Virus record (IMG/VR): IMGVR_UViG_3300009093_000034
Location: 124,001 to 188,000 of that record
Strand: one strand, 5' to 3'
DNA length: 64,000 nt
The notes below the pieces were generated by a model that saw only the letters and a list, made by a program, of their open reading frames with translations, ran no database searches and was not told the origin of the DNA. The translations under genes and the position numbers were made by a program. How positions within the stretch are numbered: the first letter of the stretch is position 1; each line of letters opens with the position of its first letter. Of this stretch, positions 3,872 through 40,742 are shown piece by piece.

Positions 3872-4022
3872 CAAATCGCGGTGGTTGTAACTCATACTTC
3901 GAACAAACTGTAAATTTGTCTATTGTAGGTGAGAATCCTACCGTCCCCACCAAACTTATTGTATACTACAGTCAGCTTGGTGGGGATGATGAAAAATCAG
4001 AGTTCCTAAATATTCCCGATTT
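3872..4022 (+). ncRNA. Circularly permuted tRNA-mimic RNA 1 (YrlA/Y-RNA-like) carrying a GUA anticodon-like arm
   Basis: T arm 3925-3941; acceptor 3942-3953 pairs with downstream 3977-3988; ends pair (AAATCG..GG / CC.CGATTT). Confidence 0.6.
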
Positions 4023-4027
4023 TATAC

Positions 4028-4101
4028 GCTACGTTAGCTCATGTAGGTAGAGCAGCTGATTTGTAACCAGCAGGCGAAGGGTGCAAGTCCTTTACGTAGC
4101 A
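4028..4101 (+). tRNA. tRNA-Thr(TGT)
   Basis: Cloverleaf, acceptor GCTACGT/ACGTAGC, loop TT-TGT-AA; no CCA. Confidence 0.85.
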
Positions 4102-4104
4102 TCA

Positions 4105-4460
4105 TTCTTTCTCTTTACCCGAAAGAGACTGGACCGAAAGGGTAGTTGGATAGCGGCGGTAGTTTTGAGGAGTTTCTTACTTCTCTGAAAGAACAATCCG
4201 TCCTTGAACAGCCTCCAACGAAGTAAGAAAGGGTCACGTTCGACTTATCCGGAGCGTGAATCTAAATGGTCTATGACCAGGGGATTAAAAGCACCGGAGG
4301 TTGGGAAGCAGCCAAGAATCAGTACTCGGTGGGCGGGAGTGGCCAAAACTGATTCATTCGTAGCGACGGGAAGATCGATTTCATCTTCTCCACCACAAGG
4401 CATCTTGATGAGATCTCTTGTGGGGGAAAATAAAGATCGAGACTCATTAGTTTCCTACAA
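4105..4460 (+). ncRNA. Large orphan structured RNA
   Basis: Helices 4173-4183/4220-4230, 4212-4216/4296-4300 (pseudoknot), 4316-4323/4348-4355, 4393-4399/4417-4423; no credible ORF. Confidence 0.55.
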
Positions 4461-4463
4461 CAT

Positions 4464-4548
4464 GGATAGGTACGTTAGCGGCTATACAGGCGGTCTTGAA
4501 AACCGTTCGCTCCGCAAGGAGCCGTGAGTTCGAGTCTCACCCTATCCG
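4464..4548 (+). tRNA. tRNA-Ser(TGA)
   Basis: GGATAGG/CCTATCC, loop CT-TGA-AA, long variable arm, G73. Confidence 0.9.
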
Positions 4549-4551
4549 GAA

Positions 4552-4890
4552 AAATCCAACCGATACAGGTCGATCGGAAATGGTGTACGTACCTAGTTTG
4601 CGCTAGGATCGCAATGCGGGACTTCAAACCTGTTTGAGTGGTGAATCATAACCCTCAAGTTGGAATTCATTTTCCTTCTTCGAAGATTCACGCCGAAAGG
4701 TAAAACCGCTCAATTTTTTGAAATAAGGACAATTCCTATGCTAACCCCTTAGATAAGGGAAGGCAGAAAGAATCGGTGAGGTGTTTTGATAGTACTCTTG
4801 GGACCACGGGTGTTCACTCAAAAGAGGCTAACAATGGGAAAAGAACAATTGTCATCTAACATCTACTAGATGAGTTCTTAGTACCAATGT
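4552..4890 (+). ncRNA. Large orphan structured RNA
   Basis: 4555-4560/4659-4664 crossing 4641-4647/4685-4691; 4841-4858/4867-4879; no ORF. Confidence 0.5.
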
Positions 4891-4896
4891 TTTAAC

Positions 4897-37686: not shown

Positions 37687-37710
37687 GATATTGTACCTAG
37701 GAGCAACACC

Positions 37711-37890
37711 ATGATCAATGTCAACAGTTCTACTGCACGCAAGATCGAAAAGCTGAGCCAGAATGCTGCCAAGCACCAGAACGACTACAAGGCTCGGATC
37801 TCCAAGATCAATCCCAACGCCGCTGGATCTGTTTCCGAAGGGCGTGAAGATGCGGGAATGGTCGTCACTCCTTCTTGGCTGAAGAAGTAA
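37711..37890 (+). CDS. 59-aa hypothetical protein (not in ORF track)
   Basis: Own class A motif, AGGAG RBS and downstream terminator. Confidence 0.7.
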   Translation: MINVNSSTARKIEKLSQNAAKHQNDYKARISKINPNAAGSVSEGREDAGMVVTPSWLKK

Positions 37891-37907
37891 CCAAACAAAA
37901 ACTCAAC

Positions 37908-37938
37908 AAAGCTCCTCTTTCGAGGAGCTTTTTCTTTT
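37908..37938 (+). terminator. Rho-independent terminator
   Basis: AAAGCTCCTC/GAGGAGCTTT plus T run. Confidence 0.85.
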
Positions 37939-37950
37939 ATACTACCCTTC

Positions 37951-38541
37951 ATGGAAACACAAATTTTAGATCCCAAGGTCTTTGCAGTCATGCTTGACTT
38001 GGAAACATTTGGGAACGGATCAAATGCATCTATCGTTCAAATCGGTGGAGTGATTTTTAACCAAAAGACCGGCGATCTTGTAGATCAGATCTGCCTCAAC
38101 ATCAATCTCCCTTCAAACACAAAGTTTAACAGAGACATTGATGCTAAGACGGTGGCTTGGTGGATTAGCCAATCTAAGGAAGCTCAAAACACCTTAGACC
38201 TAGAAAAAGGTCTAGCTCTTGATGCAGCTCTTAAGTTGTTTAGTGAGTTCATCAAGCACCACTTTGGTGATGTTAAGCCTCTCATTTGGAGTCACTCTAC
38301 TTTCGACTTCGTGATCTTAAGCAATGCCTACTCTGCTACAGAAGTACGTATGCCTTTCTCTCACAGGTGTGAAAGAGATCTTAGGACTGTAACAGATCTT
38401 GGTGGAGAACACTATTGGGAACCAGACTATCCAGAAGTAAGAGTTGGAGTTCACCATAATGCCTTAGACGATTGTCTCTTTCAGATCAAGTATTGTGTCA
38501 AGGCTTATAACAAGTCAACAGCTTGGAAGACGACTAACTGA
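37951..38541 (+). CDS. DEDD 3'-5' exonuclease
   Basis: MLDLETFG, IVQIG, WS..FDFVIL, ERDLRT, HNALDD. Confidence 0.88.
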   Translation: METQILDPKVFAVMLDLETFGNGSNASIVQIGGVIFNQKTGDLVDQICLNINLPSNTKFNRDIDAKTVAWWISQSKEAQNTLDLEKGLALDAALKLFSEFIKHHFGDVKPLIWSHSTFDFVILSNAYSATEVRMPFSHRCERDLRTVTDLGGEHYWEPDYPEVRVGVHHNALDDCLFQIKYCVKAYNKSTAWKTTN

Positions 38542-38554
38542 GTAAGGAGACTCC

Positions 38555-39313
38555 ATGAAAAAATCCCCCTACACTGATGGTCAAGCAAAGGCTCTTCTTT
38601 ACCAGGCTTGGTTAGACTCTGCTACGTGTTATCTTCAATCAGATTACGTAAGTGAGTCTGTTGATGCATCTGTCACATTCTTCTCTGACGACAAAGCCCC
38701 AAAAACTCTTCGAGTTGCTTTTAGAGGAACAGTCGATACCAACATCAAGGATCTTCTTAATGATGGAGATATTCTTCCTGTTCTTTGGGAAGACATCATA
38801 GTTCACCAGGGGTTTGCTGCTTCTGTAGACAGCCTTTGGAAGACCATCAAGAAAACTATCACTCAATTCAAGCCTGATAACATCATCTTCGAAGGACATA
38901 GTAGAGGAGCTTCTATCGCTCTATTGGCTGCTTGGAGATTCCGAAAGGAATATGCAGGTCTTGGAATCAAGGCCATTGCAGCAGTTCTAGAACCTGCTCG
39001 TTGTGTAGCTTGGTCTTCTTTGGACAATTTTAACAGAGTCTTTTTCGACCAGGATCCTTTCTCTGTTCTATGGACAAGAAACGATGAAGACATCATCACT
39101 CACATTCCTCTCTTCTTCGGAGGTTATGGTCATGTAGATGGTAAGTTCCAACTCGGCCACAGAATGTACTGGTGGACTGCTTTTGGTGGAAAGAAATGGG
39201 CTCACATGCTTCCAAATCTCATCAACAGCATTGAGAAACTCAATGGAGATGTCAACATCGATCCTATCGTAGTTTCAGACATCTTAGAAGAACTAGATAA
39301 ACAAAAGCACTAA
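38555..39313 (+). CDS. Lipase class 3 (alpha/beta hydrolase)
   Basis: VAFRGT, VHQGF, GHSRG, DIITHIP. Confidence 0.85.
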   Translation: MKKSPYTDGQAKALLYQAWLDSATCYLQSDYVSESVDASVTFFSDDKAPKTLRVAFRGTVDTNIKDLLNDGDILPVLWEDIIVHQGFAASVDSLWKTIKKTITQFKPDNIIFEGHSRGASIALLAAWRFRKEYAGLGIKAIAAVLEPARCVAWSSLDNFNRVFFDQDPFSVLWTRNDEDIITHIPLFFGGYGHVDGKFQLGHRMYWWTAFGGKKWAHMLPNLINSIEKLNGDVNIDPIVVSDILEELDKQKH

Positions 39314-39353
39314 AAGTATCAAATCAACTACCTTCTGAGATATTGTAACCACT

Positions 39354-40742
39354 ATGAATCAGAAGGTAGTTGCTGGTACCATTGTCGCTATTCTCAAGCA
39401 GAACAACTTCGAAGGGTTCTTCGTGGGTGGTTGCGTTCGTGACCGCCTCCTTGGAAAGGAACCCAAAGATTTCGACGTTGTCACCAACGCTACCCCTGAA
39501 CAGATCGAAAAACTCTTCCGTCACACCAATCCTGTTGGCCGCCAGTTCGGCATCGTTCGTGTCCTCATGGACGGACAAGAAGTCGAAGTTGCTACCTTCC
39601 GTAAGGACTCCTCGACTGGTGATGGACGCCGCCCTGACTCTGTTGAGTTCACTGATGCCGAGACTGACGTTCAGCGTCGTGACTTCACCATCAACGGACT
39701 TCTCGAAGACATCTCAAGAATTCCTGGTGATCGGATCATTGACTTTGTCGGTGGTCTGGAAGACATCAAGAACAAGGTTCTTCGTTTCATCGGAGACCCC
39801 AACCAGAGGATCGAAGAAGACAAACTTCGGATGCTTCGCTTCGTTCGTTTCATGGCCAATCTCGGATTCATGTCCATCTCAGAGCACATCGTCGCTGTAA
39901 AGCAAAATGCTCCTAAGATCATTTCGGTCTCCAAGGAGCGTATCACTGACGAAGTGACTAAGATGCTCTTAGGAAATGATCCCCGTGCTGCTATCGAGAC
40001 CATGTCTGTTCTTGGTCTTCTTGAGCACACCTTGCCTGAGATTGATCGATTGATCGACAATCCTGAGGATCCGATCTGGCACCCCAACGAAACCACCTTC
40101 TCCCACACTTTGGATGTTGTTTCATCCATCAATCGTGCCAATGATTTCTTGTTCTCTGGTGACAATGAGTTTATCAACAAGAACTTGAAGAACCTGATGT
40201 GGGCTGCTCTGTTCCATGACTCTGGAAAGCCTGACACTATCTCGAAAGAGATGAAGAATGGTGTGGAGAGAATCTCCAACAAGGGCCATGAGTTCGTGGG
40301 TGAGGATATCGCTCGCAAGGCTTTGAAGGAACTCAAGTTCTCCAACGACGATATCGAGATCATCGCCGAGCTAGTTCGGAATCACATGATCCTTCGGAAG
40401 ATTCCTGAGATGCGAAAGCACAAGCAGCGAAAGCTGCTGTCCAGCAAGAACTTCGATCTTCAGTTGGTCTTGTGTGTCGCTGACTCTGCCTTCATCCGCC
40501 CGGTCGATTGGGTGAAGAAGGTTCTTGACGTCAAGATGGCTTTGGAGGCTGAAGGTGAACTGATGCCTAAGCCTTTGATCACTGGAGAGGACTTGATCCG
40601 AGAAGGTTTCAAACCTTCGAAGTTGTTCTCTGTCGTTCTTGACCAGCTCTTCGACATGCAGCTTGAGAAGAACCTCGATAAGGGAACTCTCCTCAAGAGA
40701 GTTAAAAGTCTGATGAGCTCTGCAGCTGTGGAGGCCAAGTGA
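39354..40742 (+). CDS. cca: CCA tRNA nucleotidyltransferase with HD domain
   Basis: VGGCVRD, DFDVVT, RRDFTING, EDKLRMLRFVRF, ERI..E, H..HD. Confidence 0.92.
   Translation: MNQKVVAGTIVAILKQNNFEGFFVGGCVRDRLLGKEPKDFDVVTNATPEQIEKLFRHTNPVGRQFGIVRVLMDGQEVEVATFRKDSSTGDGRRPDSVEFTDAETDVQRRDFTINGLLEDISRIPGDRIIDFVGGLEDIKNKVLRFIGDPNQRIEEDKLRMLRFVRFMANLGFMSISEHIVAVKQNAPKIISVSKERITDEVTKMLLGNDPRAAIETMSVLGLLEHTLPEIDRLIDNPEDPIWHPNETTFSHTLDVVSSINRANDFLFSGDNEFINKNLKNLMWAALFHDSGKPDTISKEMKNGVERISNKGHEFVGEDIARKALKELKFSNDDIEIIAELVRNHMILRKIPEMRKHKQRKLLSSKNFDLQLVLCVADSAFIRPVDWVKKVLDVKMALEAEGELMPKPLITGEDLIREGFKPSKLFSVVLDQLFDMQLEKNLDKGTLLKRVKSLMSSAAVEAK

What the first reader, a model, noticed from the sequence alone, without database searches (positions are those of the whole stretch)
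3872..40742. Candidate phage RNA-surveillance system: Ro60 plus several Y-like and tRNA-shelled RNAs alongside a near-complete tRNA maturation and repair pathway
Seen: ~20 tRNA genes almost all lacking CCA; RNase P RNA; CCA enzyme; DEDD exonuclease; MBL hydrolase; PNKP; two RNA ligases; Pth2; Ro60/TROVE; two permuted tRNA mimics; at least five tRNA-shelled RNAs. Established: RNase P and CCA enzyme mature tRNAs, PNKP plus ligase reseal anticodon-nuclease breaks (T4 Pnk/Rnl1 versus PrrC), and Ro60/YrlA accompany RNA-repair operons. Inference: the phage maintains its own tRNA pool and may use decoy or scaffold RNAs against tRNA-targeting host defence. I have not seen this whole combination described as one system.
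Basis: partly seen in the sequence, partly recalled or inferred. Interest (0 to 1): 0.88.

Follow-up and report, generated by a model that had tools for sequence, protein, structure and literature searches.

The report
Phage tRNA-repair island with Y-like RNAs
A 306-kb jumbo phage carries an already-described kind of tRNA supply-and-repair gene island, but inside it sits a family of structured RNAs derived from tRNA-Tyr, matching no Rfam family, that look like Y RNAs and in related phages usually lie just upstream of the Ro60 gene.

Summary
Most of the listed parts are real. There are 20-21 tRNA genes, and 19 of the 20 called by ARAGORN lack an encoded CCA. The CCA-adding enzyme, Rv2179c-type DEDD exonuclease, PNKP, two RNA ligases (one fused to HNH), Pth2 and Ro60 are all present. 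No RNase P RNA exists. The MBL hydrolase is Apyc1-like (anti-Pycsar), not RNase Z. Ro60 carries an in-frame TAA here, but a 99.9%-identical contig has TCA (Ser) at that codon and an intact gene.

The combination is not a new system. Jumbo-phage tRNA sets with ligases, PNK-HAD, CCA enzyme, peptidyl-tRNA hydrolase and TROVE were described in 2021. In relatives Ro60 has different neighbours, and PNKP and the CCA enzyme have no close orthologue on the relatives' Ro60 contigs.

The new part is RNA. A roughly 150-nt RNA at 3873-4022 is conserved in seven lineages of the Ro60 clade with strong covariation. It is a tRNA-Tyr derivative with a closed acceptor hairpin and a terminal helix formed by its ends, which is a Y-RNA-like topology, and it matches no Rfam family. 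It lies 2.8-3.5 kb upstream of Ro60 in four relatives. Two paralogues (6091-6255, 11205-11326) and at least seven non-decoding tRNA-like elements accompany it. Ro60 binding is inferred, not shown.

The parts
3873..4022 (+). Y-like RNA 1. A tRNA-Tyr-derived mimic made of a terminal helix formed by the 5' and 3' ends, a conserved 5' module, an anticodon-like hairpin with a CUGUAAA loop, a T-arm, and a closed 9-13 bp acceptor-like hairpin.
   Evidence: nhmmer homologues in L013, L012 and L015. RNAalifold finds 18 of 37 pairs with double changes. Pair counts: 95.8% of cells paired against 42-45% when partners are slid, and 0 of 500 shuffles reach the observed value. Model R2 scores 113-169 bits in seven lineages. 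No Rfam family matches.
4028..7428 (+). tRNA cluster A: Thr(UGU) 4028-4101, Ser(UGA) 4463-4549, Tyr(GUA) 4897-4979, His(GUG) 5341-5422, Gln(UUG) 6259-6334 (the only one with encoded CCA), Trp 6459-6531, Ser(GGA) 6535-6624, Val(GAC) 6629-6704, Thr(CGU) 7358-7428.
6091..6255 (+). Y-like RNA 2, a paralogue with the same 5' module, a T-arm at 6139-6157 and a 14-bp closed hairpin directly after the T-arm.
   Evidence: R2 scores 36 bits, E=4e-5. Folding gives z=-4.4 with 0 of 200 shuffles as stable. The 5' module aligns with the other copies.
8252..9196 (+). Polynucleotide kinase-phosphatase (P-loop kinase plus HAD phosphatase).
   Evidence: PF25109 at 118.6 bits and PF13671 at 64.6 bits.
9515..9809 (+). 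tRNA-Ser(GCU) candidate at 9515-9602 and tRNA-Ser(CGA) at 9721-9809.
11132..11402 (+). tRNA-Arg(GCG) 11132-11203; Y-like RNA 3 at 11205-11326 (terminal helix of 7+7 bp, a hairpin, T-arm 11263-11279, and a GAAA-capped closed acceptor hairpin 11281-11298); tRNA-Gly(GCC) 11331-11402.
   Evidence: Folding gives z=-2.5. L033 keeps the same architecture (z=-3.2) with 3 double compensatory changes and both hairpins replaced by different hairpin-forming sequences. No Rfam YrlA hit.
12904..13923 (+). Metallo-beta-lactamase-fold hydrolase, Apyc1-like. Probably not part of tRNA processing.
   Evidence: Best PDB matches are Apyc1 7u2r and 7u2s, E=1e-11. PF23023 scores 40 bits, below its 50-bit cut-off.
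16111..16326 (+). tRNA-Leu(CAG) 16111-16183, followed directly by a conserved 142-nt tRNA-shelled RNA at 16185-16326. The shell has a 7-bp closing helix next to a T-arm, and an inner tRNA-like core at 16256-16325 whose anticodon arm is capped by a tetraloop.
   Evidence: 93% identical to L033, against 70-86% for flanking genes. Conservation ends 2 nt after the 3' strand, and one U.G pair becomes C-G in the closing helix. R1 scores 17.5 bits.
16759..17096 (+). tRNA-Ile(UAU) 16759-16830 and tRNA-Glu(CUC) 17022-17096.
20640..21559 (+). tRNA-Arg(UCG) 20640-20715; tRNA-like element 20716-20787 (6-nt anticodon loop); tRNA-like element 20995-21068 (14-nt anticodon loop); T-arm 21351-21367 with a possible 148-nt shell 21227-21374 (untested); tRNA-Glu(UUC) 21486-21559.
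21584..22273 (+). RNA ligase 2. The start codon is uncertain.
   Evidence: PF09414 at 59.8 bits; phrog_548 RNA ligase.
22679..22843 (+). tRNA-like element 22679-22747, with a 9-bp hairpin and UGCA loop in place of the anticodon arm. Aberrant class-II tRNA-like element 22753-22843, with anticodon CGA, a degenerate D arm, G3:U70 and A73.
   Evidence: (tmRNA-ends match at 21.9 bits).
25816..26107 (+). 216-nt multi-branched RNA at 25816-26031, closed by an 8-bp helix next to a T-arm-like hairpin. This is a shell candidate without comparative data. tRNA-Arg(CCU) follows at 26036-26107.
   Evidence: The region folds with z=-3.4 and 0 of 100 shuffles as stable. No Rfam family matches.
28217..28265 (+). 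49-nt acceptor plus T-arm minihelix, 55 nt upstream of the Ro60 start codon.
   Evidence: R1 scores 19.7 bits, E=5e-4; fold. It is not conserved at this position in relatives.
28321..29889 (+). Ro60/TROVE plus vWA orthologue, interrupted here by an in-frame TAA at 28780-28782. A strong terminator follows at 29901-29924.
30666..31067 (+). ART-PolyVal ADP-ribosyltransferase domain protein, a neighbour whose role is unknown.
   Evidence: PF18760 at 40.7 bits.
31937..32881 (+). HNH-RNA ligase fusion (ligase 1).
   Evidence: PF09414 at 83 bits. phrog_24030 at 367 bits plus HNH PHROGs. Intact in L009.
35316..35849 (+). Pth2 peptidyl-tRNA hydrolase 35316-35741, terminator 35745-35770, and amber-suppressor-type tRNA(CUA) 35775-35849.
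37951..38541 (+). DEDD 3'-5' exoribonuclease of the Rv2179c type.
   Evidence: PF16473 at 125.7 bits; phrog_255.
39354..40742 (+). CCA-adding enzyme with the domain set of bacterial CCA-adding enzymes (class II by my own knowledge): head domain, RNA-binding domain and HD domain.
   Evidence: PF01743 at 126 bits, PF12627 and PF01966.

Best explanation
The region is the translation-maintenance island of a 306-kb jumbo phage. It is a mosaic of separately acquired modules that converge on keeping tRNA usable during infection.

(1) Supply: about 21 tRNA genes, nearly all without encoded CCA.
(2) 3'-end maturation and repair: a CCA-adding enzyme, and probably the nearby DEDD exoribonuclease.
(3) Healing and sealing of cleaved tRNA: PNKP plus two RNA ligases, as in the T4 Pnkp/Rnl paradigm.
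(4) Pth2, to release tRNA from stalled peptidyl-tRNA.
(5) A Ro60 orthologue whose likely RNA partners are a phage-specific family of tRNA-derived Y-like RNAs.

The founding member of that family (3873-4022) keeps the anticodon arm, T-arm and acceptor strands of tRNA-Tyr. Its acceptor stem is closed into a hairpin, and its own 5' and 3' ends pair into a terminal helix at the position of the D stem. By analogy with bacterial YrlA/Rsr, the terminal helix would dock on Ro60, and the tRNA-like module would recruit tRNA-recognising enzymes or an exoribonuclease for handling damaged or misfolded RNA.

Shown here: the gene content, the RNA structures, their conservation and covariation, and their proximity to Ro60 in relatives. 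Inferred: transcription of the RNAs, Ro60 binding, and every functional step. The other degenerate tRNA-like elements are probably a mixed bag. At least one (16185-16326) is under purifying selection. The rest may be processing signals or relics.
For: Gene content. CCA absent from 19 of 20 tRNAs.

Y-like RNA 1: nucleotide homologues at about 50% protein divergence; 95.8% of cells paired against 42-45% in slid controls; 18 pairs with double changes against 1-7 when slid; 0 of 500 shuffles; model R2 scores 113-169 bits in window, L012, L013, L015, L026, L028 and L042.

Ro60 lies downstream on the same strand at 3.0 kb (L013), 2.8 kb (L015), 3.5 kb (L026), 2.9 kb (L030) and 2.85 kb (L042), at 8 kb in L012 and at 24 kb in the window. 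That meets the Chen et al. 2014 criterion of within 4 kb on the same strand in four lineages (PMC4201824).

Paralogues share a 5' module. One of them keeps its architecture through compensatory change in L033.

The repertoire as a class is described by Iyer et al. 2021 (PMC7824862). Ro60 is intact in the 99.9%-identical contig L009.
Against: There are no expression or binding data. The RNA does not match the Rfam YrlA or Y_RNA models and lacks the GNCGAAN0-1G motif.

In the window the founding RNA is 24 kb from Ro60. Two clade members (L010, L041) show no strong copy within 10 kb of Ro60. All carriers belong to one syntenic clade, so proximity to Ro60 could be inherited gene order rather than a functional link.

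The window's own Ro60 copy carries a stop codon. PNKP, the ligases and the CCA enzyme are scattered over 32 kb and are not conserved next to Ro60 in relatives.
Confidence: 0.55

Rival explanations
1. The tRNA-Tyr mimic and the other non-decoding tRNA-like RNAs are decoys or sponges for host tRNA-targeting nucleases and work independently of Ro60. The invariant tRNA-Tyr anticodon loop would attract an anticodon nuclease, while the closed acceptor end keeps the RNA out of translation.
For: The CUGUAAA loop is invariant in all lineages aligned except L015, on a covarying stem. tRNA-Tyr is a documented target of Retron-Eco7 PtuAB, and phage T5 counters it with its own tRNA-Tyr (PMC11555353). Phage tRNAs are known to evade anticodon nucleases (PMC10264068). 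Several elements replace the anticodon loop with tetraloops or oversized loops while keeping the rest of the tRNA shape.
Against: A decoy would not obviously need a conserved terminal helix and 5' module shared by paralogues that lack the Tyr loop. L015 has CAGUAAA, losing U33. No nuclease or target is known for this host.
Confidence: 0.15
2. The odd elements are by-products of rapid tRNA gene turnover (decayed or rearranged tRNA genes). At most they serve as RNase P / RNase Z cleavage signals that cut the long transcripts in which tRNAs and small ORFs are interleaved.
For: They lie on the same strand as the tRNAs, between or abutting tRNAs and small ORFs. Similar degenerate elements and minihelices occur in the relatives' tRNA arrays at non-homologous positions. 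Most have unremarkable folding z-scores. The minihelix before Ro60 is not conserved in place. The Y-like layout could arise from a tandem tRNA-Tyr duplication.
Against: None is a recent copy of a canonical tRNA; identity is 29-52%. Y-like RNA 1 shows covariation in helices that have no tRNA counterpart, namely the terminal helix and the inner hairpin. Element 16185-16326 is better conserved than the neighbouring genes.
Confidence: 0.15
3. Y-like RNA 1 is a circularly permuted tRNA-Tyr gene. RNase P and a 3' nuclease would open the closed acceptor hairpin and the CCA enzyme would add CCA, giving a two-piece tRNA-Tyr, or a resealed one after ligation by the phage RNA ligases.
For: The order of parts is that of tRNA-Tyr permuted in the D loop. 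By comparison with my recollection of the E. coli tRNA-Tyr sequence (a lead, not a tool result), the 3' part reads GGUGGGG...UUCCCGA like the 5' end of tRNA-Tyr, and the closed helix pairs CCCCACC with GGUGGGG. No canonical tRNA-Tyr was found within 10 kb in L012, L013, L015 or L042. The phage encodes ligases, PNKP and a CCA enzyme. Permuted two-piece tmRNA genes and permuted algal tRNA genes are precedents (from my own knowledge).
Against: Inserts of about 20-30 nt sit where tRNA has 1-2 nt (junctions 7/8 and 26/27). The acceptor helix is 9-13 bp rather than 7. The D loop is replaced by an 8-bp helix, so the D/T-loop core cannot form. The window also has a normal tRNA-Tyr at 4897-4979.
Confidence: 0.05
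4. One reading: all listed genes and RNAs form one dedicated, co-evolving RNA-surveillance system.
For: All parts lie on one strand within 37 kb. L009 keeps the same order.
Against: L009 is the same phage (99.9% identical). More distant relatives keep Ro60, the tRNAs and the Y-like RNA, but not the ligases, PNKP or CCA enzyme nearby. PNKP and the CCA enzyme have no close orthologues on those contigs. Terminators split the region into several transcription units. There is no RNase P RNA, and the MBL is Apyc1-like.
Confidence: 0.08

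Closest known systems
Bacterial and phage YrlA Y RNAs with Rsr/Ro60 (Chen et al. 2014, PMC4201824; Rfam RF02553)
   Same: A non-coding RNA encoded near Ro60 on the same strand. Its 5' and 3' ends form a terminal helix, and its body mimics tRNA with a T-arm followed by a closed acceptor-like stem-loop. Several copies occur per genome.
   Different: There is no match to the YrlA model: the best hit in the window is 24 bits against a gathering score of 69, and it falls on two adjacent tRNAs. 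No GNCGAAN0-1G motif is present. The terminal helix sits at the position of the D stem, not the anticodon stem. A complete tRNA-Tyr anticodon arm is retained. In this phage the RNA lies 24 kb from Ro60.
Jumbo-phage RNA-repair and tRNA-provisioning repertoire (Iyer, Anantharaman, Krishnan, Burroughs, Aravind 2021, PMC7824862)
   Same: Large tRNA sets together with Rnl-type ligases (including HNH fusions), PNK-HAD, CCA-adding enzyme, peptidyl-tRNA hydrolase and, in a subset of phages, a TROVE protein with a tRNA-like partner RNA.
   Different: That work catalogued proteins. The partner RNAs and the non-decoding tRNA-like elements were not characterised. This window has no RtcB, RlaP, Thg1 or 2H phosphoesterase.
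T4 Pnkp plus Rnl1 repair of anticodon-nuclease (PrrC) breaks
   Same: A kinase-phosphatase and an RNA ligase are encoded by the phage alongside its own tRNAs.
   Different: The genes are 13-23 kb apart and not in one operon. The ligases are of other subfamilies (no PDB relative at E<=0.01). No target nuclease is known.
Circularly permuted tRNA and tmRNA genes (two-piece tmRNA of alpha-proteobacteria; permuted tRNA genes of Cyanidioschyzon merolae). Both are recalled from my own knowledge.
   Same: The acceptor 3' strand is encoded upstream of the acceptor 5' strand, joined by a linker hairpin, with the RNA ends elsewhere in the molecule.
   Different: Large inserts and an over-long acceptor helix make a functional tRNA unlikely. 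No processing evidence exists.

Membership tests
YrlA (Rfam RF02553) / Y RNA | Scores at or above the family covariance-model threshold (69 bits). | tested here: not met
   No hit on 3873-4022, 6091-6255 or 11205-11326 at E<=5 or in a 141-nt focused scan. The only YrlA hit scores 24.1 bits and spans tRNA-Ser and tRNA-Val.
YrlA (Rfam RF02553) / Y RNA | Encoded within about 4 kb of Ro60 on the same strand (Chen et al. 2014). | tested here: inconclusive
   Met in L013, L015, L026/L030 and L042 (2.8-3.5 kb). Not met in L012 (8 kb) or the window (24 kb). No strong copy within 10 kb in L010 and L041.
YrlA (Rfam RF02553) / Y RNA | Terminal helix formed by the 5' and 3' ends, plus a tRNA-like module with a T-arm and a closed acceptor-like stem-loop. 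| tested here: met
   Covariation-supported helices 1, 3 and 4. The same layout is seen in the two paralogues.
YrlA (Rfam RF02553) / Y RNA | GNCGAAN0-1G motif near the 5' end (the presumed Ro60 contact). | tested here: not met
   The conserved 5' module reads GCG..GG...UACnUC(G/A)(G/A)A, with no G-N-C-G-A-A-(N)-G.
YrlA (Rfam RF02553) / Y RNA | Binds Ro60. | not testable with these tools
   Needs a gel-shift assay or immunoprecipitation.
Ro60 / TROVE protein | TROVE ring domain followed by a vWA domain, in one intact reading frame. | tested here: inconclusive
   Both domains are present, and both pieces match single ORFs in relatives. The frame is broken by TAA in the window but intact in L009/P0001, which is 99.9% identical at DNA level.
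Bacterial RNase P RNA (RF00010/RF00011 and relatives) | Covariance-model match, and CR-I/CR-V strands able to form P4. | tested here: not met
T4-type healing-and-sealing pathway (Pnkp plus RNA ligase) | 5'-kinase plus 3'-phosphatase protein, and an ATP-dependent RNA ligase nucleotidyltransferase domain. | tested here: met
   PF13671 plus PF25109. PF09414 is found twice, with RNA-ligase PHROGs. Activity was not tested.
CCA-adding enzyme (the bacterial type; 'class II' is from my own knowledge) | Pol-beta head domain, RNA-binding domain and, in the bacterial type, an HD domain. | tested here: met
   PF01743, PF12627 and PF01966. The nearest named homologues are bacterial CCA tRNA nucleotidyltransferases.
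RNase Z / tRNA 3' processing MBL | Closest relatives are RNase Z-type MBL nucleases. | tested here: not met
   The best PDB hits are Apyc1 (7u2r, 7u2s), and no RNase Z appears. The best Pfam hit is PF23023 Apyc1, at 40 bits against a 50-bit cut-off.
Circularly permuted tRNA gene | After rejoining, the parts give canonical tRNA spacing (7-bp acceptor, 2-nt 8/9 linker, D arm, 1-nt position 26). | tested here: not met
   The acceptor-like helix has 9-13 bp, and linkers of about 21 and 30 nt flank the D-stem-like terminal helix.

The most novel reading that the evidence does not exclude
The tRNA-Tyr-derived RNA family is a new class of phage Y RNA that programs the phage Ro60, or alternatively a dedicated tRNA-Tyr decoy or split tRNA-Tyr. 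Together with the conserved non-decoding tRNA-like RNAs, it would form an RNA-based layer of counter-defence against tRNA-targeting immunity in jumbo phages. That would mean phage tRNA arrays encode not only adaptors but also a repertoire of tRNA-shaped regulatory or decoy RNAs.
Probability: 0.2. Interest if true: 0.85.

Novelty: new variant of a known kind. Interest (0 to 1): 0.55.

Why it matters
The protein side is textbook jumbo-phage biology and adds little. The RNA side offers something testable. Ro60 is widespread in phages (219 GenBank records), yet no function is known for it there, and no phage partner RNA is recognisable outside the YrlA family. Here there is a covariation-supported RNA family that matches no Rfam family and sits next to Ro60 in several jumbo phages. 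It gives a concrete candidate ligand for binding, structural and genetic tests. It also shows that tRNA arrays of large phages hide conserved tRNA-shaped RNAs that cannot decode. Standard tRNA finders either miss these elements or mislabel them.

Tried and rejected
- **RNase P RNA.** I searched by Rfam at three stringencies and by CR-I/CR-V motifs, and found nothing.
- **Programmed readthrough of the Ro60 stop.** Rejected. The stop is TAA, whereas the suppressor-type tRNA has anticodon CUA, and a 99.9%-identical contig has TCA at that codon.
- **TAG recoding.** No ORF is broken at a TAG. TAG is simply rare as a stop, 2 of 67 genes.
- **Odd elements as recent pseudogene copies.** Rejected; identity to any canonical tRNA is 29-52%.
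- **A conserved Y RNA immediately upstream of Ro60.** Rejected. The upstream regions do not align, and the 49-nt minihelix is specific to the window.
- **YrlA membership.** Rejected.
- **Large 'shells' defined only by a 6-7 bp closing helix.** Not accepted without comparative data, because such a complement is expected by chance about 0.3 times per 300 nt (the estimate is mine).
- **Close relatives.** Searches in GenBank phages and IMG/VR found only the source contig. A genome-collection scan with the SPFH gene gave only unrelated bacteria, so elements between 20.7 and 26 kb could not be tested by covariation.
- **Gap z-score screen.** My script timed out, probably because of a bug in my own shuffle routine.
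- **Ligase typing.** PDB sequence searches for the two ligases found nothing.

Full report
**What the window is.** The window is part of IMG/VR contig UViG_3300009093_000034, 305,833 bp. It is a jumbo phage with tail-fibre, SNF2-helicase, ClpP-like and transglycosylase genes outside the finding. It has no near relative in GenBank phages. A second assembly from another sample (L009, JGI 3300025913) is 99.91% identical to window 21957-39890.

**Checking the listed parts: tRNAs and proteins.** ARAGORN finds 20 tRNAs, all on the + strand. Sixteen pass the Rfam gathering score and 19 are matched by tRNA-clan models in the permissive scan. A 21st, tRNA-Ser(GCU) at 9515-9602, is called only at relaxed threshold here but is a normal call in relative L033. 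Only tRNA-Gln has CCA after the discriminator.

Pfam confirms the following:
- CCA-adding enzyme with an HD domain, 39354-40742.
- Rv2179c-type DEDD exoribonuclease, 37951-38541.
- PNKP with kinase and HAD phosphatase domains, 8252-9196.
- HNH-RNA ligase fusion, 31937-32881.
- A second RNA ligase, about 21584-22273.
- Pth2, 35316-35741.
- An MBL hydrolase, 12904-13923.
- TROVE plus vWA_Ro60, 28810-29889.

- No RNase P RNA exists at any stringency. The two motif-like strings I could find cannot form P4.
- The MBL's closest solved relatives are Apyc1 anti-Pycsar phosphodiesterases (E=1e-11), not RNase Z. It probably belongs to nucleotide-signal counter-defence rather than tRNA maturation.
- Ro60 is split by an in-frame TAA at 28780-28782. 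Both pieces match single uninterrupted Ro60 ORFs in relatives, and L009 has TCA (Ser154) and an intact 522-aa protein. The stop is therefore a strain variant or an assembly error, not readthrough. The tRNA(CUA) could not read TAA in any case.

**Is it one system, and is it new?** Ro60 homologues occur in 219 GenBank phage records. Iyer et al. 2021 (PMC7824862, section 3.4.9) already describe, for jumbo phages, large tRNA sets backed by Rnl1/Rnl2 ligases (including HNH fusions), PNK-HAD, CCA-adding enzyme, peptidyl-tRNA hydrolase and, in a subset, a TROVE protein with a tRNA-like partner. Chen et al. 2014 (PMC4201824) found YrlA RNAs beside Ro60 in 22 phages.

A clade of Ro60 proteins 47-56% identical to this one lies on long phage contigs. 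In L010 (274 kb), L012 (292 kb), L013, L015, L041 and L042, Ro60 sits among tRNA genes: 6 to 17 per locus, and 9 or more in four of the six, with a tmRNA in L010 and L012. Its protein neighbours are ThyX, cREC, histidine-kinase, radical-SAM and ankyrin genes. No ligase, PNKP or CCA enzyme lies within 10 kb.

Apart from one 80%-identical fragment, the best PNKP homologues are at most 44% identical, and the few that carry a source name are cyanobacterial. The best CCA enzymes are at most 44% identical, and the named ones are bacterial. None of the 120 best hits lies on a relative's Ro60 contig. This is limited evidence, because only the top 120 are listed. Strong terminators follow Ro60 and Pth2 and precede the exonuclease. 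The picture is a mosaic of independently acquired modules with convergent function.

**The non-canonical RNAs: degenerate tRNA-like elements.** T-arm motifs are four-fold over-represented. A covariance model built from this phage's own class-I tRNAs recovers all canonical tRNAs. It also finds seven weaker full-length matches of about tRNA size, on the + strand between ORFs or abutting tRNAs:

| Element | Feature |
|---|---|
| 20995-21068 | 14-nt anticodon loop |
| 3881-3949 | No D stem |
| 28217-28265 | 49-nt acceptor and T-arm minihelix, 55 nt before the Ro60 ATG |
| 6094-6164 | Poorly paired acceptor; lies inside Y-like RNA 2 |
| 20716-20787 | 6-nt loop |
| 16256-16325 | Tetraloop-capped arm |
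| 22679-22747 | 9-bp hairpin with UGCA loop |

None is a recent duplicate of a canonical tRNA (29-52% identity). Relatives carry the same classes, oversized loops and minihelices, at other positions.

**The key result: a conserved Y-like RNA.** The gap between ORFs at 3773-4027 has nucleotide homologues in L013, L012 and L015 (nhmmer, E=1e-10 to 2e-3). Pattern scans and a dedicated model (R2) then added L026, L028 and L042. The remaining pattern hits are ordinary tRNA-Tyr genes.

The consensus structure has four helices:
1. A terminal helix pairing the RNA's 5' and 3' ends.
2. An anticodon-like hairpin with an essentially invariant CUGUAAA loop on a covarying stem.
3. An invariant T-arm.
4. 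A long closed hairpin in which the strand 3' of the T-arm (CCCCACC) pairs with a downstream GGUGGGG.

On six sequences, 95.8% of cells pair against 42-45% when partners are slid. Eighteen pairs show double changes against 1-7 when slid, and 0 of 500 shuffles reach the observed covariation. The four-sequence version gives the same picture.

The parts are those of tRNA-Tyr, circularly permuted in the D loop, with linkers of about 21 and 30 nt and an over-long acceptor helix. This is the Y-RNA/YrlA type of layout, but Rfam's YrlA model does not match and the YrlA 5' motif is absent.

Ro60 lies downstream on the same strand at 2.8-3.5 kb in four lineages, at 8 kb in L012 and at 24 kb in the window. 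L010 and L041 have no strong copy within 10 kb.

**Paralogues and one conserved shell RNA.** Two paralogues in the window share the 5' module and the layout of a T-arm followed by a closed hairpin.
- 6091-6255: R2 scores 36 bits, and folding gives z=-4.4.
- 11205-11326: folding gives z=-2.5. Its counterpart in L033, a relative with about 80% protein identity, keeps the architecture through three double compensatory changes and complete replacement of both hairpins.

L042 also has several paralogue-like copies. Element 16185-16326 is 93% identical in L033, while the flanking genes are 70-86% identical. Conservation stops 2 nt past its 3' strand.

**Interpretation.** The best-supported reading (about 0.55) is a known kind of jumbo-phage tRNA supply-and-repair island that also contains a new, tRNA-Tyr-derived Y-like RNA family as the likely partner of the phage Ro60. 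Ro60 binding, expression and all mechanistic steps are inferred. The rivals are as follows:
- Decoys for tRNA-Tyr-targeting nucleases. tRNA-Tyr is a documented target (PMC11555353).
- Processing signals or relics of tRNA turnover.
- A split tRNA-Tyr gene, which is unlikely on geometry.

The elements at 20.7-26 kb remain untested, because no relative of intermediate distance covers them.

Noticed in passing
window 35775-35849: There is a well-formed tRNA with anticodon CUA (amber-suppressor type; 68.6 bits in Rfam) directly after the Pth2 terminator. TAG is used as a stop in only 2 of 67 genes in the window, and no ORF is broken at a TAG.
   Followed up: partly
window 28515-28538 and 28781: Against the 99.9%-identical contig L009, the Ro60 gene carries a tight cluster of substitutions and compensating indels (aa 66-73) plus the nonsense change. 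Two further single-base differences fall in RNA-ligase genes (21970 and 32587) and one just after the exonuclease stop (38543), so most differences between the two assemblies fall in RNA-related genes.
   Followed up: partly
window 12904-13923; L013 1-751; L015 864-1739; L033 5655-6674: An Apyc1-like MBL hydrolase (a candidate anti-Pycsar/CBASS nuclease) is conserved among the tRNA genes upstream of Ro60 in several relatives.
   Followed up: partly
L010 18962-19248; L012 18188-18537: The related jumbo phages encode tmRNAs (Rfam 57.6 and 119 bits; tag peptides ending in LAA or MAA) about 8 kb downstream of Ro60. The window has none, only weak tmRNA-end-like matches at 22754-22845 and 28229-28258.
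   Followed up: no
window 22753-22843: ARAGORN calls this 'tRNA-Ser(CGA)'. It has a degenerate D arm and carries G3:U70 with discriminator A73, the alanine/tmRNA identity signature. There is no tRNA-Ala in the window.
   Followed up: no
window 24158-24625: This ORF has a C-terminal run of short Ser/Phe/Asp-rich repeats. The DNA there holds many TTCGA-type strings that mimic T-arm motifs (24572, 24603).
   Followed up: no
window 30666-31067 and 37432-37686: An ART-PolyVal ADP-ribosyltransferase domain protein lies just downstream of Ro60. A weak Lar-like restriction-alleviation ORF (23 bits against a 28.6-bit cut-off) lies before the exonuclease.
   Followed up: no
L010 13923-14309; L012 14697-15104: A cREC_REC domain gene lies 4-5 kb downstream of Ro60 in two relatives. 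Iyer et al. 2021 link this domain to cyclic-phosphate RNA-end processing. It is absent from the window.
   Followed up: no
L041 17014-18294: An IS605 OrfB / Cas12f-like TnpB gene sits inside a related phage contig 7 kb downstream of Ro60.
   Followed up: no
window 6331-6341: The 3' acceptor strand plus CCA of tRNA-Gln can alternatively pair with the 7 nt that follow (GGTCTAA-CCA-TTAGGTT). This would form a hairpin that sequesters the only genomically encoded CCA end.
   Followed up: no
window 44656-45381: A calcineurin-like metallophosphoesterase lies just outside the finding. Similar genes sit near Ro60 in L013, L015 and L042.
   Followed up: no
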